A stretch of DNA of 64,000 nucleotides. It comes from Macrostomum lignano (taxonomy: Eukaryota). Positions 10,712-29,070 of this stretch are shown here, piece by piece (position 1 is the stretch's first letter; each line of letters begins with the position of its first letter). The notes beneath the pieces were generated by a model. It had not been told where the DNA came from and made no database searches. It saw nothing but the letters and a program-made list of their open reading frames with translations. The DNA lies in the NCBI GenBank assembly GCA_002269645.1, contig NIVC01000106.1, forward strand, positions 558,001 through 622,000. The letters are read 5' to 3'. The position numbers were made by a program, and so were the translations under genes.

Positions 10712-11416
10712 CAGCAACTGAGGATCTGGGAGGCTGGCGCAGCGACTGATGAGGATCTGGGAGGCTGGCGCAGCGACTGATGAGGATCTGGGAGGCTGGC
10801 CCAGCGACTGATGAGGATCTGGGAGGCTGGCCAAGTGACTGATGAGGATCTGGGAGGCGGGCCCAGCGACTGATGAGGATCTGGGAGGCTGGCCCAGCGA
10901 CTGATGAGGATCTGGGAGGCTGGCCAAGTGACTGATGAGGATCTGGGAGGCTGGCGCAGCGACTGATGAGGATCTGGGAGGCTGGCCAAGTGACTGATGA
11001 GGATCTGGGAGGCGGGCCCAGCGACTGATGAGGATCTGGGAGGCTGGCCAAGTGACTGATGAGGATCTGGGAGGCTGGCCAAGTGACTGATGAGGATCTG
11101 GGAGGCTGGCCCAGCGACTGATGAGGATCTGGGAGGCTGGCCCAGCGACTGATGAGGATCTGGGAGGCTGGCCCAGCGACTGATGAGGATCTGGGAGGCT
11201 GGCCCAGCGACTGATGAGGATCTGGGAGGCTGGCCCAGCAACTGACGCTCATGGGAGGCTGGCCCAGCAACTGAAACTCTGGGAGGCTGGCCCAGCAACT
11301 GAAACTCTGAGAGGCTGGCCCAGCGACTGATGAGGATCTGGGAGGCTGGCGCAGAAACTGTGGATCTGGGAGGTTGGCCCAGCAAGTGTGGATCTGGGAG
11401 GCTGGCCCAGCAACTG
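10712..11416. repeat. GAGGATCTGGGAGGCTGGCCCAGC satellite, array 1 (28/31-bp units)
   Basis: Direct tandem units; the ASLPDPHQ-type ORFs are artefacts. Confidence 0.96.
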
Positions 11417-12750
11417 GGGACTTTTGGCTGCTGACCAAAGCGGTTTTTCAAGACTGTTGTCAAATCCAAGAAAAAACAATGCTTTTATGCCTTATCATTA
11501 GGATCTGTAAAATCTTTAAATATACCAATTGCTGTTTTATCTTAGTTTAAGCGACCCGTTTTCAATTGTTTTCCTAGTGTTCAATTTTTAAGGGTCAATA
11601 AAATTCCGAAAAATGCATTGCCATCATGATTGCTTTTGATATACCAGCTAAAGTAAACAGTAGTGCGCTAATACTTAGTATCCGATAAGGGAAACTTTGT
11701 TTCGGAAAATCCATGGAAAAACCGTAGAATTTCCATGAGAGTAATGATTGCTTCAGGCTGAAGTTCGTAGCTTAAAGTAAATAAGGACCACTTTAGTAAA
11801 ACTGGACCTACATGTAAAACTCAAACATCGTGTAATTTTTTGGAGGCCGACTTTCTGGAAAAAGTACTCTGTGGAGATATTAAAAAAATCATTTTAATCA
11901 CAAAATAAATGATGATTGCATTTGATTGATTGATTCGTTCATTTTTTAATGATAATCATATTTGTTAATAAAATGTTGCATTCAGGTACTGCTCCTGAGC
12001 GCCACTATGGTAGGCGTAGTTCCATTCCGATGCGCATTGTTTCTACAATACAGCGGGGCAACAATGGTAAATTAAAATAATGGTAATATTCACTGCCCCA
12101 GATAAAATGAAATCATTTTAATTTTTTTTTGATTAAATAGGATTTTTATTATCTCCGCAGTGCATTTCCCAGGAAATTGGTCTCCAAACAATTTCCATAT
12201 GATCTTTAAAGTGTTACGTCCTGTTTTACGAGTACTTCAAGGTAACAAGTGACTGTAATAATCACGGCTTTTATTTATTTACGAGTAATTTAACTTGAGC
12301 AGAATTTGCCCAACTTTAGCAACTTTAATTGTGTATTTATTAATAAGCAGAAACCATTTTTGTTTTAGCAATTAAAAGGATTTTATTGGCCTTATAAGCG
12401 ACTAATGTAGGTAGAAAAGAGTAGAAAACAAAGTGTTAAAGTACGAATTTTAATCAAACACAAAGATGTTTTTTATCATGCTTTTAGACGATTAAATACT
12501 TATAAAGAGATTTGTAGCGAGATTGAATTCAACTGTTTAAAACAACTGGTTATAGATGGATACCGAGCAGAGAAGTACTGCAGCGAGTATGTACACATAG
12601 TTAAGGTCGTCAGGGTTATTTCGAAAAGTAGTTCAGCCAGGAGTCAGTGCGATGGTATAGTGTAGCGATCCATTCAAACTTTTATCATTAGTTTAGGTTA
12701 AAGCCGCATAAACCGCCTTCCATGTTTCATCTCAAGCAGAATCGCTTGTC

Positions 12751-15700
12751 TCAGTCCTCCAGCAGCATGCGGTTCTGCTTGGCGCTCTGCAGCTCCTTCC
12801 GCGACTCGCGCATCTGACAAGCGGCCTGAGTCAGGTAGCGTCTTCTCCGCTGCCTGCCCTCCTTCTCTCGCAGCAGATCCAGGATGTCCACCTGGTCGCT
12901 GCCGCCGGCAAACAGTCGGGTCATGTCGGCAACCAGCTTGGTGGCAACGCTGTCGAGCATGTGGCACAGCACAGACATTGGCACCGTGTCCGCGATGCGC
13001 TGAGAGGCCAGCATCAGGTAGGCTCTGGTTCCCAGGCGAATTTGCTCCTCGTGTGATGGGTCGCTTGAGGCGGCTAGTGCTGTTGGTCCCCTGGAATGAA
13101 TTGGTCAAGGACCGTCACGGTTAATTAACATTATGGAAGTTTAAAAGTATTATTAACATTATGGAAGTTTAAAAGTATTATTAACATCATAGTGAGGCTT
13201 ATTTGTACTAGTATGGATTGAATTTAGCACCAAGGGGCGCCAGCACCAAGGGGCTTTAGAACCAAGGGGCTTTAGAACCAAGGGGCTTTAGCACCAAGGG
13301 GCGCCAGCACCAAGGGGCGCCAGCACCAAGGGGCTTTAGCACCAAGGGGCGCCAGCACCAAGGGGCTTTAGAACCAAGGGGCTTTAGCACCAAGGGGCTT
13401 TAGCACCAAGGGGCGCCAGCACCAAGGGGCTTTAGAACCAAGGGGCGCCAGCACCAAGGGGCGCCAGCACCAAGGGGCTTTAGAACCAAGGGGCTTTAGA
13501 ACCAAGGGGCTTTAGCACCAAGGGGCTTTAGCACCAAGGGGCTTTAGCACCAAGGGGCTTTAGCACCAAGGGGCTTTAGCACCAAGGGGCTTTAGCACCA
13601 AGGGGCTTTAGCACCAAGGGGCTTTAGCACCAAGGGGCTTTAGCACCAAGGGGCTTTAGCACCAAGGGGCTTTAGCACCAAGGGGCTTTAGCACCAAGGG
13701 GCTTTAGCACCAAGGGGCTTTAGCACTAAGGGGCTTTAGCACCAAGGGGCTTTAGCACCAAGGGGCGCCAGCACCAAGGGGCTTTAGCACCAAGGGGCGC
13801 CAGCACCAAGGGGCGCCAGCACCAAGGGGCGCCAGCACCAAGGGGCGCCAGCACCAAGGGGCGCCAGCACCAAGGGGCGCCAGCACCAAGGGGCGCCAGC
13901 ACCAAGGGGCGCCAGCACCAAGGGGCTTTAGCACCAAGGGGCGCCAGCACCAAGGGGCGCCAGCACCAAGGGGCGCCAGCACCAAGGGGCGCCAGCACCA
14001 AGGGGCGCCAGCACCAAGGGGCGCCAGCACCAAGGGGCGCCAGCACCTAGGGGCGCCAGCACCTAGGGGCGCCAGCACCAAGGGGGCGCCAGCACCAAAC
14101 GGGCGCCAGCACCAAACGGGCGCCAGCACCAAGGGGCGCCAGCACCCATACCCTTCCTTAAACGCCCAATCAAAGCAATCACTCACTGAAAAACAAAATG
14201 TGGAGACTGTTTTTGCATTGTAAGAACTCGCAGCTTCTCCGAAAACTGGCTGTCCTGAGTGAACAAGCGGCGCTCGTGTGAAATCAGCTTAGCCAGGTCG
14301 GCCCGGCACTCCGCCTCTTGGGCTTCGATCGCCTTGACAACAGTTTCTTTCAAAAGTAGCAGCAGCCTTGGAAACGCTTTGAAACAGTCATCGGCCAGTT
14401 TCTCTAGCGTTTTAGTAACTTGAGACTGCACCTCACCGAGTAGCCACTTCGCCAGCTTTTCTATCTTTGGCAAATACTTTTCGAATACAATCTTCTGAAC
14501 AACAGGGTACACAAATGTGAAACTTGGAAGCTCGCGTCCTCTTCTTAGCTGCACCTCGCCGGAGACATAGTCGGGTACGCCTTTCGAGTTGTCAACGATC
14601 CAGTCTGAAATGGGCAGTTTGCCATGGACGTCAGTGGATGGCGCCGAGTACATGAGCCATGGTACTCGTAATGAAAAAACAACTCACCAGGCTGGCTCCT
14701 GCTCACAGAGTAGCCAAAGCTGGAACATTTAGTCAGGCAGCTGCTGTACAGACTGCTGGAGCTGCCCGTCGCGAATGCGTCCTCTGAACTAGCCGTGGCG
14801 GCATGTACTTTTGAGGCAAACTGCTGCAGCTTGCGCATCAGGTAGGCTCTCTTGTCGCTGTCTGTCTCGCACAGACTGTCCTCCAGGTCTTTCAGCTCGT
14901 ATTCGTAGTCCTTCAGCTTGCTCTGCGTGAAAATTAAAAATGTTAAATTTACTTTTGCAGACTGGCTTTAGGTGAGGATAAAAAGGAGAGGGAGGAGAGG
15001 AGAGAAGAGAAGAGGGGAGAGAGGAGAGATGAGGGGAGAGAGGAGAGAACAGGGGAGAGAGGAGAGAACAGGGGAGAGAGGAGAGATGAGGGGAGAGAGG
15101 AGAGAACAGGGGAGAGAGGAGAGAACAGGGGAGAGAGGAGAGAAGAGGGGAGAAAGGAGAGAAGAGGGGAGACACAAAAGAAGAAGGGAGAAGGGAGAGA
15201 ACAGGGGAGAGAGGAGAGATGAGGGGAGAGAGGAGAGAACAGGGGAGAGAGGAGAGAAAAGGGGAGAGAGGAGAGAAGAGGGGAGAAAGGAGAGAAGAGG
15301 GGAGACACAAAATAAGAAGGGAGAAGGGAGAGAAGAGGGGAGAGAGGAGAGGAGAGGGGAGACACAAAAGAAGAGGGGAGAGAAGAGAGGAGAGAGCTGA
15401 GAAGACACAAGCACAAACAGATCCCCAGATTGTAATTCTGAAGTTTTAAAGGACCCGGGGGCCGGATGGAGAGGCCTCGCGGGCCGGAGTTTTGCTTCAT
15501 CCGAAATTGGCTTACCTTCAGACTCTCCTCTAGAGTCTCAATGCCAGCAGCCACAGCCTTGAACAATTCGTTTGTCAGCTTCTCTGCCAGCGTCTTTGTG
15601 CCAACGATATCCTTTGGCAGCTGGCTGAAGTGCGGATCGTTTTTGAAATAATCCTCCTCGATTTTGGCCACCTCGCTCAGACTGATGTTGTTCCTGAGCT

Positions 15701-17637
15701 CCTTGGGACTGCGGCATTTCACCATGACAAAGCCTTTGTGCAGTCGCACCCTGCCTTGGTTGTTGACGATGGCTTTGATGTCCTCCTCGCTGCCAGGGTT
15801 GGTCAGGTCCGGGCAAGTCAGGACTCCGATCGTCCTGGTGCCCCTTGGGTCCACTTGTTTGGCTAGAGCGATGGCCTCCACTGTCTCGATGTCCACGCTA
15901 CAGGGTACAACAACCAGGATGATCACCTGCTCCTGGCTGATGTAAGACAGAATCAGCTGCTTGGTGACCTCGTTGATCTTCGGATTCTTCTCAGAGTACC
16001 TGGCAATGCCGGGCAGGTCAACCAGGGTGAGGTCAGACACATCCGCGCTCTCAATGGTCAGGTCGATCTGCTCCGTAGACACGCCGTTCGAGTCGCCAGT
16101 GATTTCGTTTTGTACTTTGCGCACTATTTCGCCTACTTCACATGTTTTCGATATGCTGCGCTCGATGTGCTCGCCCTGGCGATTTTGGTAGCTGATGACG
16201 GGGGTTTTAAAGGGTGTCTTGTCAGTGAATCTCGCACTACGAGCTACTTGTAACGTTGCAGCTTGGAACACAGCACATGAAGAACTTCTGCAGGCTGGCT
16301 TTGGGCGAGGAGAGAAAAGGCCGGAGAGGGGAGAGGAGAAAACAGAGGGAGAGGAGAGAACAGGGGGAGAGGAGAGAACAGGGGGAGAGAGGAGAGAACA
16401 GGGGGAGAGGGGAGAGAACAGGGGGAGAGGAGAGAACAGGGGGAGAGGGGAGAGAACAGGGGGAGAGAGGAGAGAACAGGGGGAGAGAGGAGAGAACAGG
16501 GGGAGAGGGGAGAGAACAGGGGGAGAGGAGAGAACAGGGGGAGAGGGAGAGAACAGGGGGAGAGAGGAGAGAACAGGGGGAGAGGGGAGAGAACAGGGGG
16601 AGAGGAGAGAACAGGGGGAGAGAGGAGAGAACAGGGGGAGAGAGGAGAGAACAGGGGGAGAGGGGAGAGAACAGGGGGAGAGGAGAGAACAGGGGGAGAG
16701 GGGAGAGAACAGGGGGAGAGGAGAGAACAGGGGAAGAGAGGAGAAAAGAGGGGAGAGAGGAGAAGAGGGGAGAGAGGAGAGAAGAGGAGAGAGAGGAGAG
16801 AAGAGGAGAGAGAGAAGAGGGGAGAGAGGAGAGAACAGGGGAGACAGAGGAGAGAACAGGGAGAGGAGAGAAGAGCAGACAATTTCATCAATTTCAATTT
16901 TGAACCAATTTCATTTTTGACAATATCAATGAAGCGCTGCGCTCCAGGCTGAAACGAAGTTGAATGTAAACGCATCTACTAAAAAGCCACGACCCCTGGT
17001 TCGATTCAATGTTTTGACCACATTCATTTGGGACTTGTGCGCACAAAGATTGGCCCAGGGGGTGTCGTAGGCCAGCCCCCCCCAAAGCCTGACGATTAGA
17101 ACGAAAGTCAGGGCCGCTGTACACACCCTGTGTGAGCATACACTGTAATAAGTCAAACAGGAGTTCAAAGGACGTGAATTGATATCTGAACTATAAAGAT
17201 GCTCACCTAATCCTGCCAGTCCAGTCTCCAGTTGGCTTTGAGCGCATGCTCAGCTGCAGCGGGCAGCGAGTCACAATGCCGCTACCGCGCGGCAAGTCCA
17301 CGCCCGAGATGGCCTCCAGCACGCTGGATTTGCCTACCGATTGGTCGCCCACAACGGCTACTGTGGGCAGGCGGAGCTCATTTTGTAGGCCGTGCGACCG
17401 GAGACGATCGATGCTGTTCAGCACTGGCCGGATTCGCTCGCGATACTGCTGACTGAGCGCTGGAGTGAACGGCTTGGAGGCGTCTGCAGCAGCGTCTGGC
17501 GACACAGTCTCAGTGGCACCAGGGCTCTTGACCTGTTTCGCCGGGGTCGGGCCGTCAGAGGACTTGTGCTGCTGTGGGAGAAAAGGTAGTAGTAGTAGTA
17601 GTAGTAGTAATAGTAGTAGTAGTAGTAGTAGTAGTAA

Positions 17638-17729
<92 letters not shown>

Positions 17730-17748
17730 ATAGTAGTAGTAGTAGTAA

Positions 17749-17813
<65 letters not shown>

Positions 17814-17814
17814 A

Positions 17815-17861
<47 letters not shown>

Positions 17862-17867
17862 ATAGTT

Positions 17868-17936
<69 letters not shown>

Positions 17937-18039
17937 ATAGTAGTAGTAGTAGTAGTAGTAGTAGTAACAGTAGTAGTAGTAGTAGCAGTAGTAGTAGTAT
18001 TAGTAGTAGTAGTAGTATTAGTAGTAGTAGTAGTAGTAA

Positions 18040-18120
<81 letters not shown>

Positions 18121-18694
18121 TAGTACAAAAGTTTACAAGCAAATAGCTTGTAGCTTTCGTTTTGTTCTATTAGTCTTCCGCTACAGACCTATAACAACGA
18201 CAGTACGTGGCCGTGGGTAACAAAACCTGGAATTTTCTGAACGACCAAACAAACGGATAATTTTACGTTAATATAATAAATCTTTATTATTGGTTATACG
18301 TGCCCCGATTGGGGCCATGCAGATGTGCAACCGACAGCTCAGCCGCAGTTATTGCGCGGCGCATCTGAAGACTGCGTACGGCTGTTTAGTCCAAGGACTT
18401 AGGGGGGTCGCTACACACCCTCAATTATCCCCCAGCTAATGCTGGCACCCATTTCAAAGCTGGGTGAACTGAAGCAATGCAGAGTTAAGTGTCTTGCTCA
18501 ATAAGGACACAGCTTGTTCCAGCAGGATCGGGAATCGTTAACGTTAACACTTACAGATACAGAATTACGAGCTACAATGAGCTACACTCCGACTCCTACA
18601 GTAACTTCTAGCATGGCAAAAGCAAAGCATGCAGTACAAAATAACTCACCCGCTTGTTTGCTACAGAGCATGACGCACTACGTAGCGATGACAT
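12751..18694 (-). CDS. Mx: Mx-like dynamin-family GTPase, 6 exons, 692 aa
   Basis: Exons 18694-18650, 17571-17207, 16191-15516, 14922-14688, 14604-14187, 13090-12751. All junctions are GT-AG and phase-compatible (0,2,0,1,2); total 2079 nt. Motifs: G1 [22 protein letters not shown]3 DLPG, G4 [13 protein letters not shown], stalk [27 protein letters not shown]. No PH or PRD domain, which fits Mx. Exon 1 is the least certain. Confidence 0.92.
13226..14146. repeat. 16-bp AGCACCAAGGGG(CTTT/CGCC) satellite in Mx intron 5
   Basis: Two alternating unit variants; the same family occurs inverted at 32275-33580. Confidence 0.96.
14985..15405. repeat. Polypurine GA-rich repeat in Mx intron 3
   Basis: GGAGAGAACAGGGGAGAGA-type units. 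Confidence 0.93.
16305..16875. repeat. Polypurine GA-rich repeat in Mx intron 2
   Basis: GGAGAGAACAGGGGGAGA units. Confidence 0.93.
16988..17145 (+). mobile_element. Diverged, 5'-truncated SINE family A relative in Mx intron 2
   Basis: B-box GGTTCGATTC, CACATTCATTTGGGAC and AGGGCCGCTGTACAC..TGTGTGAG blocks shared with family A. Confidence 0.6.
17587..18124. repeat. (TAG)n/(CTA)n microsatellite, ~180 units, in Mx intron 1
   Basis: Direct reading; the poly-S/T/V ORFs are artefacts. Confidence 0.98.
18305..18590 (-). mobile_element. SINE family B copy in Mx intron 1
   Basis: Shares the 3' body and the CORE-like GTGTCCTT...AGCAAGACACTTAACTCTGCATTGCTTCAGTTCACCCAG block with the 54620 copy; head is decayed. 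Confidence 0.8.
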
Positions 18695-19283
18695 TTTAGG
18701 TTGATACAGTTTCTCTTTTAAAACTAAATAAAGCGTTTTTTGAAAACTTAAAATTTAAGTTAAATTAAAACTTAAGATTAGGAATAACAACGGTGTATAT
18801 ACTCTTCTTTGCTCACTGGTACATCACTATCCGTTGGCTTTTCTACGAGTAGATATACCTATTTTAACCAGCTTATAACACTTGCTCTAGCGACACTGTA
18901 CATTCCTCTCATCAATGTACATTCAGGTCTTAACGTGCACGTAAAGAACTGCTGTCAGCATTTCTAGGAAATTCCCGCATATATTGCGGATGAACTATTT
19001 ACTAGAAATGTTTTGTCTGCATCAATTGATTTTTGCAATTGATCGGTGTAATAAACTAGAAAAAATACCTTACGGATATAGGTATTCATTTTTTAGAACA
19101 AATACTCTTATTGCTTTGGTAGGAGGCAGACCCAGTGCTCATCTTTTGATATGTTGTGCCTTTCCTACAGTATAGCTCTATTGATCTTTATAAAGCTCTT
19201 CAGTTAGAAAATTAGGGTTCAATGTCATTTTTTCTTCTACGTACAATCTTACATGTCGTCCTGTGCCTAAATACTATAAAAAT

Positions 19284-19622
19284 CAACGTCTCTAGTCATT
19301 GTCCAGAAGACACAGCCTGGCGTAATGACAAACTCAACTGGCCATTATTTCAGCTACTTCTCGTCAGCTCAAGCCTATCATCAGCTTATTCATAGTCTAT
19401 GGCCCAACAGCTTTTTTATTTATAGTCTATGGCCCAACCACCGCCCTCTTTACGCAGTCGCACGCACGCAGATTCTTACCCTGAAATAATGACCGCTTCC
19501 GGCACGCTGAAATAATGGCCAGGCTGTGTCTTATAGACAATGACGTTGCGTAGTAGGTAAGGGGCTGAAATAATGGCGCACTCGTGTTTGGCCATTATTT
19601 CAGCCCCTTACCTACTACGCAA
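19284..19622. repeat. Nested inverted-repeat (foldback/MITE-like) element
   Basis: Perfect 32-bp stem 19546-19577 / 19591-19622 with a 13-nt loop; second inverted pair ~19295-19355 vs ~19506-19545. Confidence 0.85.
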
Positions 19623-19967
19623 TCTACCACACTGTGTGCAAGAGATGAAAATAAGGTTGATTTATAAAACTGAAAAAGGAATTCGTTCGTAAGAAAATGT
19701 GCTTTATAATGCAGTTGCACCAATAAATTTAGCTCCTTGCTTACTGCGCACCCCGAATGGGGCACTAGATTGCTAGTCGAATCTTATTTTCTAAGCGAAA
19801 AGCTCTATACTGCATTTGTGTCCGATTAAAAGCCAATAGCAATTCTTGTGCCGAAAAATGAAAACCTCCATCTTCGCAATGCACTTTACTCGGTAAAATC
19901 AGCCTCCTAAATTTCCCAAGAAACGTAATTAATAGTTTCCCGTTTATCTACTTGAAATAGTTGAATA

Positions 19968-20972
19968 CTGAGGAACTGGGAAGCTGGCCCAGCAACTGAG
20001 GATCTGGGAGGCTGGCCCAGCAACTGAGGATCTGGGAGGCTGGCCCAGCAACTGCAGAGGATCTGGGAGGCTGGCCCAGCAACTGAGGATCTGGGAGGCT
20101 GGCCCAGCAACTGCAGAGGATCTGGGAGGCTGGCCCAGCAACTGAGGATCTGGGAGGCTGGCCCAACAACTGAGGATCTGGGAGGCTGGCCCAGCAACTG
20201 CAGAGGATCTGGGAGGCTGGCCCAGCAACTGAGGATCTGGGAGGCTGGCCCAGCAACTGCAGAGGATCTGGGAGGCTGGCCCAGCAACTGAGGATCTGGG
20301 AGGCTGGCCCAGCAACTGCAGAGGATCTGGGAGGCTGGCCCAGCAACTGAGGATTTGGGAGGCTGGCCCAGCAACTGAGGATCTGGGAGGCTGGCCCAGC
20401 AACTGAGGAACTGGGAGGCTGGCCCAGCAACTGAGGATCTGGGAGGCTGGCCCAGTAACTGAGGAACTGGGAAGCTGGCCCAGCAATTGAGGATCTGGGA
20501 GGCTGGCCCAGCAACTGCAGAGGATCTGGGAGGCTGGCCTAGCAATTGAGGATCTGGGAGGCTGGCCCAGCAACTGCAGAGGATCTGGGAGGCTGGCCCA
20601 GCAACTGAGGATCTGGGAGGCTGGCCCAGCAACTGCAGAGGATCTGGGAGGCTGGCCCAGCAACTGAGGATCTGGGAGGCTGGCCCAGCAACTGCAGAGG
20701 ATCTGGGAGGCTGGCCCAACAACTGAGGATCTGGGAGGCTGGCCCAACAACTGAGGAACTGGGAGGCTGGCCCAGCAACTGAGGATCTGGGAGGCTGGCC
20801 CAGCAACTGAGGATCTGGGAAGCTGGCCCAGCAACTGAGGATCTGGGAGGCTGGCCCAGCAACTGAGGATCTGGGAGGCTGGCCCAGCAACTGAGGATCT
20901 GGGAGGCTGGCCCAGCAACTGAGGATCTGGGAGGCTGGCCCAGCAACTGAGGATCTGGGAGGCTGGCCCAGC
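19968..20972. repeat. GAGGATCTGGGAGGCTGGCCCAGC satellite, array 2
   Basis: 28-bp (CAACTGAG) and 31-bp (CAACTGCAGAG) units; same orientation as array 1. Confidence 0.96.
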
Positions 20973-21224
20973 TAAGACTATAGTTGGAAAAAGACACACG
21001 CATGAATCACACGCATTAAAGGTTTCCCCCCAAAAGCCAGCTAAACACCTTCAAAGCCACAACGCGATACGTGCCATCATATTTTTTAATTTTCTAAACG
21101 GAAAAGCCTTTGTTTTACATTTTCCACCTTTATAAATGTACTTTTCAAACGATGTATACCTCAATGGACACGCAATCAGAAAGAATCGCCATGTCAATCA
21201 TAATTGATTCCTGGGGAATCGCTA

Positions 21225-21430
21225 AGATGTCAAGACTCATGAGGAGAATTGCTGAGATTTCAAGGCTTATGAGGGGAATCGCTGAGATGTCAAGGCTCAC
21301 GATTTGAATTGCTGAGATGTCAAGGCTCACGATTTGAATTGCTGAGATGTCAAGGCTCAGGAAGAGAATTGCTGAGATGTCAAGGCTCAGGAAGAGAATT
21401 GCTGAGATGTCAAGGCTCACGAGGTGAATT
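21225..21430. repeat. 30-bp tandem repeat
   Basis: GAATTGCTGAGATGTCAAGGCTCACGATTT units. Confidence 0.9.
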
Positions 21431-21909
21431 TCTAAAATTCTTTGTCTGTCTTTTAAGGCGGATGCTTTTTTGCATCATTTTCCTTAAGAAATTAACAATA
21501 GTGACTCTGCGAGGCCAAAAACCGACATTATTGTGGTTCATTCAAAGTGTTGATTTATTTTTTTGCTGCCTCCGCAATGAGGGGCCGCAGGTTGACATTT
21601 CTTCTGTCTTCAGTTTCTCTACAACCGCAAAGATAAGAAAATATGCAATTTATTCTTTGAGGCTCTTTACTCAAAACAATAAGACTAAAAAATCTTCTCC
21701 CAACAAATTTGAAATTTGCAAAAAGGAACCGAGTAAAACAAACAGCGCTTAATGCAGTCACTGAAGTGAGTTCAGGTATTCAATTATTCCCTGTATATTT
21801 TCCATATTCCGCATAGAGATCTTTCATGATCAGGTGTGTCTGAGAAGCGTCCCGACGGCATCAGTAGCGCAGAACACCGATTGAAACTTATTGAGCTTCA
21901 CCACCCCCA

Positions 21910-22110
21910 CTACCACCACCACCACCACCAACTATGCGTAGCGCTGCACGTGTCCCCTACGTTGCAACTGGAATCTCCATAGCATATTTCGTTAATACAA
22001 AAGCAGATGTCACTTAGACACTGGGGGCTTTTATATCGATCGAAATTAAAAGCTTCAACTGCTACCATAGAAACGATGAGAACCAGAACCTGAACAAACA
22101 GAACTCGCAT
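21910..22110 (-). CDS. Putative secreted 6-cysteine peptide with a C-terminal hexa-tryptophan tail (66 aa)
   Basis: ATG at 22110. Signal-peptide-like MRVLFVQVLVLIVSMVAVEA, then FNFDRYKSPQCLSDICFCINEICYGDSSCNVGDTCSATHSWWWWWW*. TATAAATA at 22198-22191; AATAAA at 21654-21649 on the minus strand. Confidence 0.7.
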   Translation of the reverse strand: MRVLFVQVLVLIVSMVAVEAFNFDRYKSPQCLSDICFCINEICYGDSSCNVGDTCSATHSWWWWWW

Positions 22111-22190
22111 GCCTGCTTCTTGAAGCTGTTTGGAGTCAATAATCTTGTATTGTATAAGAATTGATTGGGTGTCCGTGCCGCTGTAACTTT

Positions 22191-22198
22191 TATTTATA
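22191..22198 (-). promoter_or_regulatory. TATA box of the small secreted peptide gene
   Basis: TATAAATAAAA about 80 nt upstream of the ATG at 22110. Confidence 0.55.
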
Positions 22199-22679
22199 GA
22201 CTCAAGATTCCATAAAAATCGACAAGCAGCAGTTCTCAAATTCGACTTCCTGTCAAGATTACAATAAAATTTCTATTTCCCTAGATTTTAATCCAGCAAC
22301 ATAAAAAAATTATTGCAATCTGAGCAGGAAGTCCCATTAAGGATTTTATGATCACGATCTCTGTAAGGAATATGAATAGTAAATTTTCTAACTGCTGAGC
22401 TCACTTTATTGATTGCATTCAGGGCTGTCTGTTTTACTTTCTTATTACTTTTGAGTAATTAATTAAAGAACCTTCTGTGAGTAAGTTACACGTCAATTCT
22501 TATCTTTGGCTGTACAGAAACTGAAAAAAGTGCAATCTGCGTAGGAGTGGGGAGGCTGGAACTTTAAAACACTTAGAAATATCGAAAACAATGATTCCCT
22601 TCTAAAGTCTCCTAAAGAAAAAAACCCCCAATATCTCTAACTCAAATCCAGCAGGGGTGTTTGGGATGGCAATTTTTTC

Positions 22680-23015
22680 GGGGTTCCGAAACCCGACCCC
22701 GAAACCCGACCCCGAAACCCGACCCCGAAACCCGACCCCGAAACACGAAACCCGACCCCGAAACCTGACCCCGAAACCCGACCCCGAAACCCGACCCCGA
22801 AACCCGACCCCGAAACCCGACCCCGAAACCCGGCCCGAAACCCGACCCCGAAACCCGACCCCGAAACCCGACCCCGAAACCCGGCCCCGAAACCCGACCC
22901 CGAAACCCGACCCCGAAACCCGACCCCGAAACCCGACCCCGAAACCCGACCCCGAAACCCGACCCCGAAACCCGACCCCGAAACCCGACCCCGAAACCCG
23001 ACCCCGAAACCCGAC
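22680..23015. repeat. 13-bp CCCCGAAACCCGA tandem repeat
   Basis: Direct reading. Confidence 0.96.
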
Positions 23016-23394
23016 CACCTTTAAATCTGCGCCCCCGTTGGAAAGGCAACAGAGAACGAATTTTTAAGCAACCATGTACAGACTTTGGCCTTGTGCAGTC
23101 ACTATTGAAAATTTCCCAAGGAAAATGATGTTTGAAGCAAAAAGGCATCCGGCCATGGCTTAACCTCAAGTTTTCTTCTTTAATTTTTGTCCTACAAACC
23201 ACTCCCAATTTTGAGACCTATCTCAGCATCTCAGAAATTCTCCCCATAAGCAACAGGATTTTAATGGAATTTTGAAGTTTCTTTAAAAACTTTTGATATG
23301 AGCGTACTATTTGGTTTTCTCTTCACTCGAGACGATATATTCTGAAGTCTATATAACTATAAATCTAAAAAGTTTGTATGTATATATGTATATG

Positions 23395-24465
23395 CAACTG
23401 ACACTCTGGGAGGCTGGCCCAGCAACTGATGAGGATCTGGAAGGCTGGCCCAGCAACTGATGAGGATCTGGGAGGCTGGCCCAGCAACTGATGAGGATCT
23501 GGGAGGCTGGCCCAGCAACTGATGAGGATCTGGGAGGCTGGCCCAGCAACTGATGAGGATCTGGGAGGCTGGCCCAGCAACTGATGAGGATCTGGGAGGC
23601 TGGTCCAGCAACTGATGAGGATCTGGGAGGCTTTCCCAGCGACTGATGAGGATCTGGGAGGCTGGCCCAGCAACTGATGAGGATCTGGGAGGCTGGTCCA
23701 GCAACTGATGAGGATCTGGGAGGCTTTCCCAGCAACTGATGAGGATCTGGAAGGCTGGCCCAGCAACTGATGAGGATCTGGGAGGCTGGCCCAGCAACTG
23801 ATGAGGATCTGGGAGGCTGGCCCAGCAACTGATGAGGATCTGGGAGGCTGGTCCAGCAACTGATGAGGATCTGGGAGGCTTTCCCAGCGACTGATGAGGA
23901 TCTGGGAGGCTGGCCCAGCAACTGATGAGGATCTGGGAGGCTGGCCCAGCAACTGACACTCTGGGAGGCTGGCCCAGCAACTGACACTCTGGGAGGCTGG
24001 CCCAGCAACTGATGAGGATCTGGGAGGTTGGCCCAGCAACTGATGAGGATCTGGGAGGCTGGCCCAGCAACTGACACTCTGGGAGGCTGGCCCAGCAACT
24101 GGCACTCTGGGAGGCTGGCCCAGCAACTGAGGATCTGGGAGGCTTGCCCAGCAACTGACACTCTGGGAGGCTGGCCTAACAACTGACACTCTGGGAGGCT
24201 TGCCCAGCAACTGACACTCTGGGAGGCTGTCCCAGCAACTGATGAGGATCTGGGAGGCTGGCCCAGCAACTGACACTCTGGGAGGCTGGCCCAGCAACTG
24301 ACACTCTGGGAGGCTGGCCCAGCAACTGACACTCTAGGAGGCTTGATGAGAATCTGAGAGGCTGTCCCAGCAACTGATGAGGATCTGAGAGGCTGTCCCA
24401 GCAACTGATGAGGATCTGAGAGGCTGTCCCAGTAATTGATGATGATCTGGGTGGCTGGCGCAGTA
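23395..24465. repeat. GAGGATCTGGGAGGCTGGCCCAGC satellite, array 3
   Basis: 31-bp (CAACTGATGAG) and 28-bp (CAACTGACACTCT) units; same orientation as arrays 1 and 2. Confidence 0.96.
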
Positions 24466-24640
24466 CGCGCGTGCGCACAGCTGGTGACTGTTGGTCTTTG
24501 AGCACGAGAATCAGATTTCGTAGTTACATGTACGAGTTATTTATATGCAGTCTATGGTATTGGAAATGAGAATGATGAGGATTGAAAATTTGCATCTATT
24601 TTGTCTGAGACAAGACAAACAAGAAATTCTTCAATAATAA

Positions 24641-27600
24641 ATGAATCGATCTTATAGAGCCGTCCTGAGCATGAGCAGCTTACCCAAAGCCATGGAGAGA
24701 CAAAATCCAAGCTTACTTGCTAGCAGCAATTCAGCAGCAGAGGACAATACATGTACAAGTTCAACCGTCACGTCAACCAGGCGACGGTTGCACTACATGG
24801 ATTTTGGTCGATTAGAGCAGTTCCTTCAACGTAGATTGAACGAAGTTCAAGAGCGTCAAAATCATCAGCAGGAGCATCAGGCGTCTCCTGCAACTATGGA
24901 GGTGCCCAATGAAGCTAAATATAACCATCTAGCATCGCCACTGACTACTCAGTCCAGCCGGTCAGCAGCCACCGCCAGGAATTGGTTGCAGCGGGCCAAC
25001 GGAGCTCGTCGGCGTGTTGCCCGTCGTTTGTCGTCAGTTCTGGCCGGCTGTCTGCGAGGAGGTGAACGCGTTGAAGGCGAACTGGTTGACGCTGGTCCAG
25101 AGGTCGCTGGGTTGCCCATGCAGCCGCTGAAGAGAATCGATGAGAGCAACGAACGGCAGCGCTGCAACAACGCCACCGCTGATGAGCTGACATCGGCCAA
25201 TGCGAGATCCAGCGTCTTGCCTACAATTGAGGCCGTTGACTTGGTGCCAGGTTGGTTTGCTCCGTCTGTTTTTTCTTGGTGTCTGTCTCTGTTTTCTGTC
25301 TGTCTCTGGAGCTGTCTGTATTTATAAATCAACAAATGTAAATTATCGTAGGAAAGTAGTGGGAACTCTGGCGCTAACACATTCGACGTCATTTTTCCTG
25401 AGGCAATGAGCTGCGAGGCAGCTCTGGGGCAATTCTGTTCACTCCTCTGACTGTATGCAGACACGCACTCATACAAACGCTTCACCGGGTGGTCCCAAAT
25501 GATGTCGTGTCACACCTTGCAGCAGCAGCTGAAGTGTCATCCGCAGGCGCTAAGTCGGGCACTCGTCGCTCCGCCAGGAGCAGCGGCAGGAGGAGCCCTC
25601 GCTCTTGCGCCACCACCCTGACGGCTGTGTCAGCCAGTCGGCTGGTCTCGTTACCATCGTCGACAACAGCCCGGACACCGACTCCAACTGCTACTCGAAC
25701 TTCGAAGTCGTCAGCGACATCCCGTCAGAGACGCCATCGTCACGTACAGAGCGACGACACCAACGACAAGACGGCCCTGTTGAGATCTTCCGGCAGCGAG
25801 CAACCGGACGCGAACCTTGACATTGATCACCAGCTGGTGAACTTCAGCGCAGCGACAAATTCGGTTATCGACGCCGTCAGGGTGGACCGTTTCTTGAAAC
25901 GCGGCGCCGCCGGCGCTGTAGTCGGCGGGGCCGGGGGCGTCATTACCAGCGGAGCAGGGAAAACTGCGACTGTTGCAAAAAAAGACGGTTTTGCTGGTAA
26001 AATCACGCCCGTCGGCAAAGGCCCCGCTGCAGGCAGAGGTGCCAAAAAGGTTGTTGCTGGGCAAAGTCGCGAGTTGGGCGGTGGCAATACGAAACTAGCG
26101 AAAGTGAGTCTGAGTCCTGTTTTTTCTTTGCAGGCACTTATAATGCACTTATTGATACGAGTTGGTCTATTCACGAGCCTACCAAAGTTTAAAAGATTTT
26201 ATTAGTAGTATCAGAATGCTAACAAAATCATTATTGAGCTATTTTAATACAAGGGAATAGAGGTGAGATAGAGGGGTATTAGAGAGGTGAGAGAGAGGGG
26301 TATTAGAGAGGTGAGTTAGAGGGGTATTAGAGAGGTGAGATAGAGGGGTATTAGAGAGGTGAGATAGAGGGGTATTAGAGAGGTGAGATAAAGGGGTATT
26401 AGAGAGGTGAGACAGAGGGGTACTTAGGAGTTTAAGAGTGGCTTAAAAAGAATCAGAAAGAGTCGGGAGCTCCCAAAACAGGTGCAAAGGAGCAAAGCAA
26501 TAAAAAAATAGAAATAAATATTGTAATAAATTTATGATTGAAAATTATTCATACTTACTTCTAAATCGTTTTGTATCAACTTTATAAAAAAGAAGCGGCC
26601 CGTAAAGAAGTCAGGCAAGAAGTCGGCCAGATCTAAGAATTCCGGCACAACCGCTGGTGCTTCTAGCCTGAACAAGCTGGTGACCATCACCTCCGAGGGT
26701 GTAGCCTGGAGCGACGAATTAGAATCGTTGGGCAATGCGCCAATTAATGAGCTCTACAGACCAGGCGCAGTCGAAAGGCGTCCGGCGCACCGGCTTCCAG
26801 AGGATCCTGTGCACGATCCGCCGAAAAGTGTGGCACTACGGCGTACCATCGAGTGTCCGCTGGTACCGCTGACTACCTATAAGACCGACAAGAAGGGCGA
26901 GCTGTTTTATTCAGTGGTAAGATTGTCCCACTGGACGTCTGTGATTGCAGTTGGTCACGTGATCCGTAAAAGCTCCTAGCTGATCTCGCTTTTTATGGCT
27001 GTACATTCGCAGCAACCCCACTCCGCTACACTGGGAGTCTGCGGTTGCAGTTGGTCACGTGATCTGCAAAAGCTCCTAGCTGATCTCGCTTTTTATGACT
27101 TAAAATGTACAGAAACCTCACTCCACTAGGCGTCAATAATTGTGATTGGTCACGTGATCCATAGAAGCTCCATAGCCGATCTCGCATTTTTTGGCTGTAC
27201 ATTTGCAGCAACCTCACCTCCGGATAGACTGGGGAGTATCTATCATTGCAATCGGTCACGTGATCCATAAAAGTCACGTGATCTTTTCAAACTTCACGAT
27301 TAATTTTTACATATACATATGTACTCTGTATATAGCTACGAGTACAGTGGTCCTTGCTTCTACGTTGGCGAAGGGCCTGTTACTTTTAAAACTACATTGT
27401 GCGCTGCAAAATAAACGTCTTGCACACCGAAAGTCGTGGAAGAGGGCTATGGCTCACTGACGAAGGCAAACAAGCCAGAAAGCGGTCTAGGTCTATATAC
27501 TAGGTCACATCATGTACTATACGTACACTTGTAATCAATTAAAACAAAAGCAAACAAAAAAACAGGGCCATTCATCTACTGCAGGTCCAACTGTGCCAAA

Positions 27601-28043
27601 CGTGCCGTAAAGACGTCTGTCCGAGATGTCGCCGCAGTCTGTGCACATTCTGCACGGCTATCACCTGTTCAGACTGTCGCATGCTGTTGCACCAGATGGT
27701 CGAGATTGGCAAAGTCGATGGCGGCGGCGGAGGAGGACGCAGGTCGCTGGTCCGAGCCAGCCAATCGCAGCAGAGACAGCAGATGCAGCCGTACTGTCAC
27801 TCTTGCGAGAAACCGGTTTGCCTAGTCTGCATCGACAGCCTGTCGATGTCGCTGCCAACTAACGATCGTTGCGTTCAGCACAGCATCTCTGGCAACGTTT
27901 ACGAAAACATCTGTCCCTGGTGCGGCCGGACAATCTGCCGGGAGTGCCGTCGGAGTTCATGCTTTGCCTGCACCAAAGCGTTTCAGTGCGCCTGTCAAAG
28001 CAGCTGTCAGTGCGACAGTTACGCTAACCTGCAAAATTCATGA
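24641..28043 (+). CDS. Uncharacterised protein (~697 aa): low-complexity/basic N-terminal part and CxxC-rich C-terminal domain
   Basis: Proposed exons 24641-25250, 25403-26103, 26593-26916, 27585-28043; phases 1,0,0 compatible; 2094 nt open. The last exon encodes many CxxC pairs (CQTC, CPRC, CTFC, CSDC, CHSC, CLVC, CPWC, CREC, CFAC). The acceptor at 26593 is weak and the start codon is uncertain. Confidence 0.6.
26260..26422. repeat. 24-bp purine-rich tandem repeat (intron)
   Basis: AGAGAGGTGAGATAGAGGGGTATT units. Confidence 0.9.
26935..27285. repeat. ~100-bp degenerate tandem repeat carrying CACGTG E-boxes
   Basis: GTCACGTGATC with CACGTG at 26956, 27056, 27151, 27257 and 27275. Confidence 0.85.
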
Positions 28044-29070
28044 TCTGATGCTATGATCGGCACACTGAGTTATAGGAATGGAAGTCGTATGAAATGTTCG
28101 TTTTCTGCTTGATTCAATGCTTGAGCTGTGTAAGGACGATTTTTCTGCATATTTTGATTGAAGAAGTTCATGATATTAGCCCATACGCGGGCATACATGT
28201 ACATGTATGTACTTACATTGTAAGTGATCACTAATTAATTGATTTTCAAAGAAATACACTCGACCCATCGCATTTCCCAGACGGAAATTAGATTCTTCCG
28301 TCTAATCTACGATGACAAATTTAAAGGATCCCGATCTGTTGATCAGAAAAATATTGTTTTCATGTAACATTTGCATGTCATATAATTCGATCGAGAATTT
28401 CATACATGTATACCAAAGAAAGGAACCACGGTAAAAAATTCGATCTAGTGGTTCTTGATCGATGACAATGACATGCATATAACGTTCAAGTCTACCATCG
28501 ATGGTACAGCATGATTTTGCAGCACACGCTTTAATTTTTAGTGAAACATCTAATGGAATCCTTAATCTAAAAATACTCTTACTATTGAAGATTTAAACAA
28601 CTATAACGCCTTGTAAAGTTACAGATGCACAAAGCCAGAGCCTCCTGTTCTGTAAGTTAAACTGTCATGTACGTGTTCGGCTACGAAGGACAAACTTAGT
28701 CGGAAATGTAGCTTCCTCTGAACTGTAAATTTTTTAGTTTTCTGAAACCTAGATTAAATGTATTTAAGCTATTAAAATCCTTTCTTAAAAGCTGTTTTTG
28801 ACAATCGAAATTGTGCTATTTGTTTGAAAGCACTGCCTAAGCGGTTTTAAATCTTAATTATTCTAAGAAATCTCTATAAATTTCACCAATTTAAGGATAA
28901 AAGTGTGACGAAGTCAACAGAAGTATCGGACAGAATTTGACTCCGTCACAAGTGAATCGAGATTTTTTGGCAATCTTTCACATAAATCATTTAAAGGCCA
29001 ACTAGCCTCACTTCTATTCTGTATTCGCTGATATTTTGGTGGACGTGAACAATTTTTAAACCGACTTAAA

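What the first reader, a model, noticed from the sequence alone, without database searches (positions are those of the whole stretch)
21910..22198. Unrecognised small secreted 6-Cys peptide ending in six consecutive tryptophans
Seen: a compact intronless unit with TATAAATA ~80 nt upstream, ATG 22110, a 20-aa hydrophobic leader ending VEA, a 46-aa mature part with pattern C-x4-C-x-C-x4-C-x5-C-x5-C (net anionic), then SWWWWWW-stop and a downstream AATAAA. I recognise no family with this Cys frame plus a W6 tail. Inference: a disulfide-stabilised effector (defence, toxin-like, mucus or adhesive peptide) whose aromatic tail could bind membranes, lipids or glycans, or drive aggregation. Caveat: the tail lies in a (TGG)n microsatellite that continues degenerately past the stop (TGG x6 TAG TGG GGG TGG).
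Basis: partly seen in the sequence, partly recalled or inferred. Interest (0 to 1): 0.8.

Follow-up and report, generated by a model that had tools for sequence, protein, structure and literature searches.

The report
Orphan secreted-peptide ORF in Macrostomum
A 66-codon reading frame in the flatworm Macrostomum lignano looks like a small secreted six-cysteine peptide with a tryptophan-run tail and is intact in all three subgenome copies, but it has no relatives and no expression evidence, so it is only a plausible young gene.

Summary
The ORF is real and lies on the minus strand: ATG 22110, stop TAG 21912-21910. All described features are present except the "downstream AATAAA", which is AATAAG; the nearest true AATAAA is 256 nt past the stop. 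The window is Macrostomum lignano assembly Mlig_3_7, contig NIVC01000106.1.

An ORF with a signal-like leader and at least 6 Cys is expected 0.007-0.027 times per 64 kb. That is unusual for one window, but roughly 80-320 chance cases are expected genome-wide.

No homologue turned up in 5.8 billion proteins, 1.84 billion representatives, Pfam, PDB or JGI metagenomes.

Two further syntenic subgenome copies carry the ORF. One is identical. The other keeps the TATA box, the whole leader and all six Cys, but has five amino-acid changes in the mature part and a different tail (WWRWWWWG). dN/dS is 0.65 and not significant, and codon usage is no better than that of random ORFs.

The GenBank annotation has no gene here, but its pipeline dropped non-coding and repeat-overlapping transcripts.

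Verdict: a plausible lineage-restricted small secreted peptide gene (about 0.5), against a chance ORF (about 0.38). The W tail is an evolutionarily labile microsatellite product. Interest is modest.

The parts
22191..22198 (-). TATAAATA, candidate TATA box 88 nt upstream of the ATG
   Evidence: Read directly. Identical in L003 and L004. Only 3 of 164 window ORFs have TATAAA at -130..-40 with no upstream ATG.
22111..22190 (-). Putative 5' leader: no ATG, G at -3 of the start codon
   Evidence: There are two substitutions right after the TATA box (22187, 22184) and none in the remaining 73 nt between the window and L003.
22051..22110 (-). Codons 1-20, signal-peptide-like leader MRVLFVQVLVLIVSMVAVEA
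   Evidence: There are 0 substitutions in 60 nt versus L003. AF2 models it as a helix (residues 2-24, pLDDT 85-88). It has a cryptic GTTCNN repeat: GTTC occurs 4 times, shuffle p = 0.0006.
21931..22050 (-). Codons 21-60, mature core with six Cys (C31, C36, C38, C43, C49, C55)
   Evidence: There are 7 substitutions in 120 nt versus L003 (5.8%), giving 5 amino-acid changes; all Cys are kept. AF2 single-sequence pLDDT is 71-80 for the Cys core, with one beta-hairpin.
21913..21930 (-). (TGG)6 encoding the W6 tail
   Evidence: In L003 the tail is TGG TGG CGG TGG TGG TGG TGG GGG TGA, i.e. WWRWWWWG-stop.
21910..21912 (-). Stop codon TAG, one G->A step away from a seventh TGG repeat unit
   Evidence: L003 has TGG at this position and stops at a TGA where the window has TGG.
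21899..21930 (-). Degenerate (TGG)n microsatellite containing the tail, the stop and the first 3'-flanking codons
   Evidence: TRF: period 3, 10.7 copies, 86% matches.
21887..21892 (-).
   Evidence: Conserved in L003 and L004.
21649..21654 (-). Nearest canonical AATAAA, 256 nt after the stop, inside the left arm of the inverted repeat
   Evidence: Conserved in L003 and L004.
22232..22345 (-). 114-nt hairpin immediately upstream of the TATA box
   Evidence: Minus-strand MFE is -47.5 kcal/mol (z = -10.6); plus-strand MFE is -27.4. It has 43 pairs including 5 G:U. Rfam gives only sub-threshold miRNA-precursor hits.
21459..21832 (.). Left arm of a long degenerate inverted repeat that brackets the ORF-bearing centre (21833-22348)
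22349..23151 (.). Right arm of the inverted repeat, interrupted at 22602-23083 by an insertion that includes a 13-nt tandem array (22686-23016)

Best explanation
This is a lineage-restricted, probably young, intronless gene of Macrostomum lignano, located at NIVC01000106.1:579,910-580,198 on the minus strand.

Inferred mechanism:
- RNA polymerase II starts about 30 nt downstream of the TATA box and makes a short mRNA.
- Its first ATG opens a 66-codon frame.
- The 20-residue leader directs the product into the ER and is cut after VEA.
- The 46-residue acidic product folds into a small three-disulfide module that ends in a tryptophan-rich tail.
- The tail is simply the translated part of a (TGG)n microsatellite. 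Its length and its stop are set by slippage and point mutation, so it is a labile hydrophobic or interfacial appendage, not a conserved motif.

Shown: the sequence anatomy, its rarity under null models, the absence of any relative, and its retention in all three subgenome copies.

Inferred: transcription, translation, secretion, disulfide formation and any function. A gland secretion such as mucus, rhabdite, adhesive or seminal fluid is the most natural setting in this animal.
For: - ORF, leader, Cys frame, TATA box and a leader free of upstream ATGs were read directly.
- It is the only one of 164 window ORFs that combines a signal-like leader with at least 6 Cys. The expectation is 0.007-0.027 per 64 kb.
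- TATAAA at the right distance with no upstream ATG occurs in only 3 of 164 ORFs.
- All six TGY triplets of the core are in frame.
- The window is M. lignano Mlig_3_7.
- The two other syntenic subgenome copies both keep the ORF. L004 is identical. L003 has the TATA box, 5' leader, signal peptide (0 of 60 nt changed) and 6 of 6 Cys intact.
- Substitutions between the window and L003 concentrate in the mature-peptide codons: 5.8%, against 1.9% for the 1.17-kb unit (binomial p = 0.005), 0.5% for everything upstream including the signal-peptide codons (p = 0.0003), and 0.4-2.6% in neighbouring unique DNA. A conserved signal with a variable mature part and a fixed Cys frame is typical of fast-evolving secreted peptides.
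- AF2 without an alignment gives pLDDT 71-80 for the Cys core.
- The missing annotation is not evidence of absence. The GenBank 'coregenes' set excluded transcripts judged non-coding by TransDecoder and transcripts overlapping repeats (PMC5730564). The window's Mx/dynamin-like gene has no exact match in the protein collection either.
- W6 is below the run lengths reported to stall yeast ribosomes: more than 8 for NGD and more than 11 for RQC (PMC7913769).
Against: - No transcript, peptide or homologue was found.
- Genome-wide, about 80-320 ORFs with a leader plus 6 Cys are expected by chance (scaled), and the supporting features were chosen after the fact.
- Codon-usage log-odds is -0.21 bits per codon, the same as random window ORFs (-0.16) and unlike known exons (+0.46). 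The training set was tiny.
- dN/dS is 0.65 (5 nonsynonymous, 2 synonymous; p = 0.64), with no third-position bias.
- The ORF diverges at about 4%, against a CDS average of 1.1% between subgenomes (PMC10733133). It does not behave like a constrained CDS.
- 3 of the 7 core substitutions are CpG transitions in a CpG-rich stretch (o/e 1.3 against 0.57 for the window). Against the downstream flank the excess is only p = 0.065.
- Keeping the frame and the Cys after 7 random substitutions has p = 0.29.
- Both ends of the ORF are simple-sequence-like.
- There is no canonical poly(A) signal near the stop.
- The unit sits in minisatellite-dominated DNA inside a large inverted repeat.
Confidence: 0.5

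Rival explanations
1. It is a chance open reading frame in non-coding, repeat-rich DNA. The DNA is either intergenic or an intron of the neighbouring Mx/dynamin-like gene. A degenerate GTTCNN repeat happens to read as a hydrophobic leader and a (TGG)n microsatellite reads as poly-W. The frame is intact in all three copies only because the subgenomes are about 2% apart.
For: - The expected genome-wide count of such ORFs is about 80-320 (scaled).
- Codon usage matches that of random ORFs.
- dN/dS is not different from 1, and substitutions are spread over all codon positions.
- Retention has probability 0.29 under neutrality.
- The tail differs between copies as a drifting microsatellite would.
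- GTTC is enriched in the leader (p = 0.0006).
- No gene is annotated in any of the three copies.
- No homologue exists anywhere.
- An older gene model (A0A1I8F431) places the site in a 7.4-kb intron.
Against: - The joint occurrence of leader, 6 in-frame Cys, a TATA box at -88 and no upstream ATG is rare. It is roughly 0.02 x 0.02-0.05 per window, i.e. a handful of cases per genome.
- The leader and 5' region are unchanged between diverged copies, while the mature part is the most variable stretch of the unit.
- The Cys core is modelled with moderate confidence.
Confidence: 0.38
2. The unit belongs to a mobile or foldback-like element, or to a structured-RNA locus, and the ORF is incidental. 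The features would be about 370-nt degenerate inverted arms, a central 516-nt segment and a strong 114-nt hairpin. The biologically relevant product, if any, would be the hairpin RNA (miRNA- or hpRNA-like) or nothing at all.
For: - Nested inverted repeats bracket the ORF.
- The arms can pair: cofold gain is -81 kcal/mol, against -14 for shuffled partners.
- The hairpin has z = -10.6 on the ORF strand, with 5 G:U pairs and no A.C pairs, and folds 20 kcal/mol better than the opposite strand.
- There are weak Rfam matches to long miRNA precursors.
Against: - No second copy of the arms or the centre was found in the window, L001 or L005.
- No target-site duplication is seen at the arm ends (by inspection).
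- Arm pairing is equal on both strands, which points to a DNA-level duplication rather than RNA-level selection.
- The arms are only 72-85% alike, with many indels.
- Rfam scores are far below threshold: 30 bits against 79.
- This reading does not exclude a nested gene.
Confidence: 0.1

Closest known systems
Small secreted cysteine-rich peptides with a conserved signal and a variable mature part (conotoxin/defensin-type gene organisation)
   Same: A short precursor with an N-terminal signal peptide and six Cys in a 25-residue core. Between the two diverged copies the signal is unchanged, the mature residues vary and the Cys frame is fixed.
   Different: There is no pro-region and no CC doublet. 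The spacing C4-C1-C4-C5-C5 matches no framework I know, and Pfam and PDB searches gave nothing. Only two distinct alleles exist, so the pattern is not statistically secure.
Inhibitor cystine knot (knottin) peptides
   Same: Six Cys, about 30-40 residues, secreted, and a beta-hairpin in the model.
   Different: The ICK loop consensus (CX3-7CX3-6CX0-5CX1-4CX4-13C, from my own knowledge) fails at loop 2 (1 residue) and loop 4 (5 residues). Disulfide connectivity is unknown. There is no Foldseek match.
Tryptophan-rich lipid-binding or antimicrobial domains (puroindoline Trp-rich loop WRWWKWWK; indolicidin; tritrpticin). This is from my own knowledge and was not tested.
   Same: A Trp cluster attached to, or forming, a small secreted peptide. 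The L003 tail WWRWWWWG resembles the puroindoline-a motif. Puroindolines are also Cys-rich.
   Different: Those peptides are cationic, whereas this one is acidic (net -3, pI 4.35). The Trp run here is C-terminal and microsatellite-encoded. There is no sequence relationship.
Taxonomically restricted or de novo genes arising in simple-sequence-rich DNA
   Same: No homologue in billions of proteins. The ORF is short and intronless, its ends are made of repeat-like sequence, its codon usage is weak and its evolution is near neutral.
   Different: Neither expression nor a non-genic ancestral state in an outgroup could be checked here.
Tenebrio-type beta-helical antifreeze proteins (Cys every sixth residue). 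This is from my own knowledge.
   Same: The segment CYGDSSCNVGDTCSATHS has C-x5-C-x5-C with a Ser/Thr/Asp/Asn/Gly-rich filling.
   Different: There are only one and a half such units, there is no TCT motif, and there is no sequence or fold hit.

Membership tests
Classical secretory signal peptide | A positively charged n-region, a 7-15+ residue hydrophobic h-region, and small uncharged residues at -3 and -1 of the cleavage site | tested here: met
   M-R, then V3..V18 (mean Kyte-Doolittle 2.97), then V-E-A|F. AF2 models a helix at residues 2-24. This was checked by rule only; SignalP was not available.
Knottin / inhibitor cystine knot | Loop lengths within CX3-7CX3-6CX0-5CX1-4CX4-13C (consensus from my own knowledge) | tested here: not met
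   The observed loops are 4, 1, 4, 5, 5. Loops 2 and 4 fall outside the ranges.
Knottin / inhibitor cystine knot | Disulfide connectivity I-IV, II-V, III-VI forming a knot | not testable with these tools
   Only summary output of the AF2 models is available. There is no Foldseek match to any PDB chain.
EGF-like, TIL, granulin, WAP, Kazal, defensin and other curated Cys-rich domains (Pfam) | A match to the family profile | tested here: not met
   Pfam-A gave 0 families at E <= 10. PDB phmmer gave only a 10-bit hit at E = 9.
Puroindoline / Trp-rich antimicrobial peptides | A cationic Trp-rich segment, and for puroindolines a 10-Cys backbone in the plant LTP/amylase-inhibitor fold | tested here: not met
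   The mature peptide is acidic (5 D/E against 2 K/R, pI 4.35), has six Cys and gives no Pfam hit.
Fast-evolving secreted-peptide gene (conotoxin-like evolutionary pattern) | A conserved signal sequence, a hypervariable mature region with dN/dS > 1, and invariant Cys | tested here: inconclusive
   The signal has 0 of 60 nt changed, the core has 7 of 120 changed and 6 of 6 Cys are kept. However, dN/dS is 0.65 (p = 0.64), Cys retention has p = 0.29 by chance, and 3 of the 7 changes are CpG transitions.
Taxonomically restricted (orphan or de novo) gene | No detectable homologue outside the lineage | tested here: met
   0 hits in 5.8 billion clustered proteins, in 1.84 billion representatives by phmmer and in JGI metagenome contigs. 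The collection does not appear to hold gene calls from M. lignano read sets, so only annotated proteins of the genus were covered.
Taxonomically restricted (orphan or de novo) gene | Evidence of transcription and translation | not testable with these tools
   No RNA-seq or proteomics access. There is no annotated gene at the site in any of the three copies, but the annotation pipeline filtered out such transcripts (PMC5730564).
Taxonomically restricted (orphan or de novo) gene | A non-coding orthologous sequence in an outgroup | not testable with these tools
   No other Macrostomum genome is searchable here. The older RMD paralogue locus L005 has different neighbours and no trace of the ORF.
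MITE / foldback transposon | Multiple genomic copies, terminal inverted repeats and target-site duplication | tested here: inconclusive
   Inverted arms are present. No TSD is seen. No extra copy was found in about 150 kb of other M. lignano sequence, which cannot detect low or moderate copy numbers.

The most novel reading that the evidence does not exclude
This is a young, possibly de novo, secreted mini-protein gene assembled from simple-sequence DNA. A degenerate GTTCNN repeat supplied the hydrophobic signal peptide. A (TGG)n microsatellite supplies a poly-tryptophan tail, whose length and stop position are reset by slippage and single-base changes in each subgenome (W6 against WWRWWWWG). 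The uninterrupted W run stays below the length that stalls ribosomes. Meanwhile the disulfide core diversifies quickly between the three subgenomes of a neopolyploid.
Probability: 0.25. Interest if true: 0.55.

Novelty: new member of a known kind. Interest (0 to 1): 0.3.

Why it matters
If the ORF is expressed, three things follow.
- It would be an unannotated, lineage-specific secreted peptide of a regeneration and sexual-selection model flatworm. The species' published GenBank annotation excludes short-ORF and repeat-overlapping transcripts by design, so there may be a hidden class of such genes.
- It would be a clean example of a coding sequence whose signal peptide and C-terminal tail come from simple repeats.
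- It would be a rare natural poly-tryptophan terminus whose length is microsatellite-tunable.

If it is not expressed, it is a useful calibration case. A very gene-like small ORF (TATA box, leader, Cys frame) can arise and persist in repeat-rich DNA of a recently triplicated genome without any constraint.

Tried and rejected
- **Exact-sequence look-up.** Neither the 66-aa form nor the 109-aa TTG-extended form is on record. An RMD1 ORF from the same window is not on record either, so the collection does not hold ORF calls from this genome and the negative result says little.
- **Homology.** All of these were empty: word-indexed search, exhaustive phmmer, Pfam, PDB sequences, Foldseek with two AF2 models and JGI metagenomes.
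- **Paralogues.** None were found in the window, in L001 or in L005, the older RMD paralogue locus.
- **L002.** I first took L002 for an independent M. lignano locus, but it is the window itself (100% identity over 11,930 nt), so I discarded it as evidence.
- **Apparent tandem duplicate in L003.** The tblastn output seemed to show two copies in L003. This was an artefact of two loci stored in one file, and it resolved into L003 and L004.
- **Internal symmetry of the central segment.** None was found, so the ORF has no mirror copy.
- **RNA-level selection on the long arms.** Rejected, because pairing is equal on both strands.
- **Rfam.** Nothing at gathering score for the whole window.
- **Splice donor in the W run.** Considered and rejected: GTAGTG is a poor match and is absent in L003 (by inspection).
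- **GPI-anchor signal.** Rejected, because a six-residue hydrophobic tail is too short (my own knowledge).
- **Seminal-fluid screen.** The supplementary files of the M. lignano seminal-fluid screen do not contain the sequence. A full-text search for the peptide strings found nothing.

Full report
**What is in the sequence**

The finding's unit lies on the minus strand.
- TATAAATA is at 22198-22191.
- An 88-nt stretch without any ATG follows, then gcaggcATGc with the ATG at 22110.
- Sixty-six codons follow, ending at TAG 21912-21910.
- The product is MRVLFVQVLVLIVSMVAVEA|FNFDRYKSPQCLSDICFCINEICYGDSSCNVGDTCSATHSWWWWWW.

The leader has the n/h/c layout of a signal peptide: R2, a 16-residue h-region with mean Kyte-Doolittle 2.97, and V-E-A before the predicted cut. 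The 46-residue remainder has six Cys spaced 4-1-4-5-5, net charge -3 and pI 4.35.

The six Trp codons are the in-frame part of a degenerate (TGG)n microsatellite (TRF 21899-21930). It reads TGGx6 TAG TGG GGG TGG TGA.

One detail of the finding is wrong. The motif after the stop is AATAAG (21892-21887). The first true AATAAA on this strand is 256 nt downstream, at 21654-21649.

**Is it more than chance?**

- Of 164 ATG-ORFs of at least 40 aa in the window, 4 have a signal-like leader and 7 have at least 6 Cys. Only this one has both.
- Markov-chain simulations of the window (orders 1, 3 and 5) give 0.007-0.027 such ORFs per 64 kb.
- That is unusual for one window. Scaled to a 764-Mb genome it means roughly 80-320 chance cases, so the ORF alone proves nothing.
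- A TATAAA at -130..-40 with no intervening ATG is found for only 3 of 164 ORFs. This lowers the chance expectation to a handful per genome, but these features were picked after the fact.
- All six TGY triplets of the core are in frame, with none in the other two frames.

**Where the window comes from**

- The best hits to a neighbouring Mx/dynamin-like ORF are Macrostomum lignano proteins.
- The RMD1 gene at 30.1 kb hits BOX15_Mlig000495g1.
- Its locus, L002 (GCA_002269645.1, NIVC01000106.1:577,071-599,543), is 100% identical to window 19071-31000 without a gap.
- The window is therefore NIVC01000106.1:558,001-622,000 of assembly Mlig_3_7, and the ORF is at 579,910-580,110. L002 is not independent evidence.

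The ORF sits between two genes:
- an unannotated Mx/dynamin-like gene (exons about 14.2-17.6 kb, minus strand);
- unannotated ORFs at 24.6-26.2 kb.

Minisatellites flank it on both sides. An older automatic gene model (UniRef A0A1I8F431) splices exons at 25.6-25.0 kb to the dynamin exons. That would put the ORF in a 7.4-kb intron on the same strand.

**Local architecture**

- The ORF occupies the unique 516-nt centre (21833-22348) of a long, degenerate inverted repeat.
- The left arm is 21459-21832.
- The right arm is 22349-22601 and resumes at 23084-23151, after an insertion that carries a 13-nt tandem array.
- The arms could pair (-81 kcal/mol gain), but equally on both strands. This points to a DNA-level inverted duplication.
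- I saw no target-site duplication and no further copy in the roughly 150 kb of M. lignano sequence I held.
- Directly upstream of the TATA box lies a 114-nt hairpin (22345-22232). It folds far better on the ORF strand (-47.5 kcal/mol, z = -10.6) than on the other (-27.4), thanks to five G:U pairs. Rfam gives only sub-threshold miRNA-precursor matches.

**Relatives**

There are none.
- Exact look-ups failed.
- The word-indexed search of 5.8 billion proteins found nothing.
- The exhaustive phmmer search of 1.84 billion representatives found nothing at E <= 0.001.
- Pfam gave nothing at E <= 10, and PDB sequences gave one meaningless hit at E = 9.
- JGI metagenome contigs gave nothing.
- AlphaFold2 without an alignment gives a confident helix for the leader. 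For the mature peptide alone it gives pLDDT 71-80 over the Cys core, with a single beta-hairpin and a disordered tail.
- Foldseek finds no similar solved structure.

The negative protein searches say little about expression. An ordinary ORF of this genome and the window's own dynamin-like gene are also not on record.

**Independent copies**

The RMD1 cluster has two further members on other contigs. Their loci, L003 (NIVC01001182.1) and L004 (NIVC01002533.1), are colinear with the window. The DV1 genome is known to consist of three paralogous subgenome copies, with about 2.2% SNP divergence genome-wide and 1.1% in CDS (PMC10733133).

*L004.* It carries the identical ORF within a 3.4-kb tract of near identity, so it adds nothing.

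*L003.* It is the informative copy.
- Over the 1,172 aligned positions compared in the unit, it differs from the window by 22 substitutions.
- There is 1 substitution in the 440 nt upstream, 2 just after the TATA box, 0 in the rest of the 5' leader, and 0 in the 60 nt of signal-peptide codons.
- There are 7 in the 120 nt of mature-core codons, 1 in the tail, and 11 in the 445 nt downstream.
- The protein changes are D24N, R25Q, I35N, I39F and H59Y. All six Cys are kept.
- The tail reads SWWRWWWWG-stop. It has one TGG unit fewer and a TGG->CGG change. It has TGG where the window has its TAG, and TGA where the window has TGG.

Both copies therefore end inside the microsatellite but at different units, without a frameshift.

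**How to read that comparison**

*For a gene.* The leader and promoter-proximal region are unchanged, while the mature core is the most diverged stretch.
- It differs at 5.8%, against 1.9% for the unit (binomial p = 0.005).
- Everything upstream of it, including the signal-peptide codons, differs at 0.5% (p = 0.0003).
- Neighbouring unique DNA differs at 0.4-2.6%.
- This is the familiar pattern of fast-evolving secreted Cys-rich peptides.

*Against over-reading it.*
- Versus the downstream flank the excess is only p = 0.065.
- Three of the seven changes are CpG transitions in an unusually CpG-rich stretch (o/e 1.3 against 0.57 for the window).
- Nei-Gojobori counts are 5 nonsynonymous and 2 synonymous, giving dN/dS = 0.65 (p = 0.64).
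- Seven random substitutions would leave the frame and all Cys intact 29% of the time.
- Divergence between the copies is patchy at the kilobase scale.
- A crude codon-usage score places the ORF at the median of random window ORFs (-0.21 against -0.16 bits per codon; known exons score +0.46, from only 871 training codons).
- The leader contains a cryptic GTTCNN repeat (GTTC four times in 60 nt, shuffle p = 0.0006). Both ends of the ORF therefore look like translated simple sequence.

**Annotation**

No gene is called at the site in any of the three copies. However, the GenBank annotation used the 'coregenes' set. That set removed transcripts without a TransDecoder ORF and transcripts overlapping repeat annotations (PMC5730564). 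TransDecoder's default minimum is 100 aa (my own knowledge), so a 66-codon gene between minisatellites would have been dropped even if it is transcribed.

**Most likely explanation**

I put about 0.5 on a real, lineage-restricted and probably young gene. In this reading:
- transcription is TATA-driven;
- the first ATG starts a 66-residue precursor;
- the precursor is cleaved after VEA;
- the product is a secreted acidic three-disulfide mini-protein;
- its Trp-rich tail is a microsatellite read-out that changes freely, not a conserved functional motif.

The tail would make the C-terminus strongly interfacial or aggregation-prone. This works like the Trp-rich segments of puroindolines or indolicidin (my own knowledge), but the peptide is acidic and unrelated to them, so membership fails.

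In yeast, more than 8 consecutive Trp trigger no-go decay and more than 11 trigger RQC (PMC7913769). The uninterrupted runs here (6 and 4) are below that, so translation is feasible.

Many prostate-limited transcripts of M. lignano encode secreted proteins (PMC5977470). A gland product is therefore a natural guess, but it is only a guess. The sequence is not in that paper's supplementary files.

**Rivals**

- **Chance ORF in neutral, repeat-rich DNA: about 0.38.** It explains the codon usage, the near-neutral substitution pattern, the labile tail and the lack of annotation. It handles the joint rarity of the features and the conserved-leader/variable-core contrast less well.
- **Foldback-like element or hairpin-RNA locus with an incidental ORF: about 0.1.** It rests on the inverted arms and the strong strand-biased hairpin. 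It lacks copies, a TSD or any family match.

**Novelty and verdict**

If real, this is a new, family-less member of a well-known kind: an orphan small secreted Cys-rich peptide. Its curiosity is a microsatellite-encoded poly-Trp terminus. Interest is 0.3.

Noticed in passing
window 22232-22345 (minus strand): A 114-nt near-perfect hairpin lies 40-140 nt upstream of the TATA box. Minus-strand MFE is -47.5 kcal/mol (z = -10.6), against -27.4 on the plus strand. It has 43 pairs with 5 G:U and no A.C. Rfam gives only sub-threshold hits to long miRNA precursors. Apart from a 1-nt T-run indel it is unchanged in the diverged subgenome copy. It could be a structured RNA or a small palindromic insertion.
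   Followed up: partly
window 21459-21832 and 22349-23151: A long degenerate inverted repeat (72-85% identity, many indels) brackets the ORF-bearing 516-nt centre. The right arm is split by a 482-nt insertion containing a 13-nt tandem array (CCGAAACCCGACC, 26 copies). No TSD and no other copy were seen.
   Followed up: partly
window 19546-19622: A perfect 32-nt inverted repeat with a 13-nt loop (TTGCGTAGTAGGTAAGGGGCTGAAATAATGGC / reverse complement), lying 345 nt before the 28-nt minisatellite that starts at 19967.
   Followed up: no
window 10704-11420, 19967-20972, 23405-24463: Three arrays of one minisatellite family (28-31-nt unit containing TCTGGGAGGCTGGCCCAGCAACTGA), all in the same orientation, about 85% alike. 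Two of them flank the ORF unit. They generate long spurious ORFs on both strands.
   Followed up: partly
window about 14183-17571 (minus strand): An Mx/dynamin-like GTPase gene (Dynamin_N and Dynamin_M domains). It has no exact match in the protein collection; the best M. lignano hit covers 79% of the query at 67% identity. So it appears to be missing from the GenBank annotation of this contig. One long ORF runs from the coding exon into a Ser/Leu/Pro-coding minisatellite.
   Followed up: partly
window 24641-26205 (plus) and 24949-25640 (minus): A GC-rich segment with long ORFs on both strands and no Pfam match. The old UniRef model A0A1I8F431 uses the minus-strand frames as 5' exons of the dynamin-like gene. 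No gene is annotated here in GenBank.
   Followed up: partly
window 33741-34718 (minus strand): A homeobox exon (homeodomain E = 1.7e-19) followed by poly-Gln and low-complexity sequence. By eye the helix-3 sequence looks Hox-like ([14 protein letters not shown]). It was not classified further.
   Followed up: no
window 18900-39500 versus L003 and L004: Divergence among the three subgenome copies is mosaic at the kilobase scale: 0-2% in most unique segments and about 5% at 37.7-38.5 kb. A 3.4-kb tract (19.3-22.7 kb) is nearly identical between the window and L004. This suggests gene conversion or recombination between copies, or partial assembly redundancy.
   Followed up: partly
window 17465-18220: A roughly 650-nt (AGC/AGT)n-type array encodes poly-Ser, poly-Thr or poly-Val depending on the frame. 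It lies immediately upstream of the dynamin-like gene's first matched exon.
   Followed up: no
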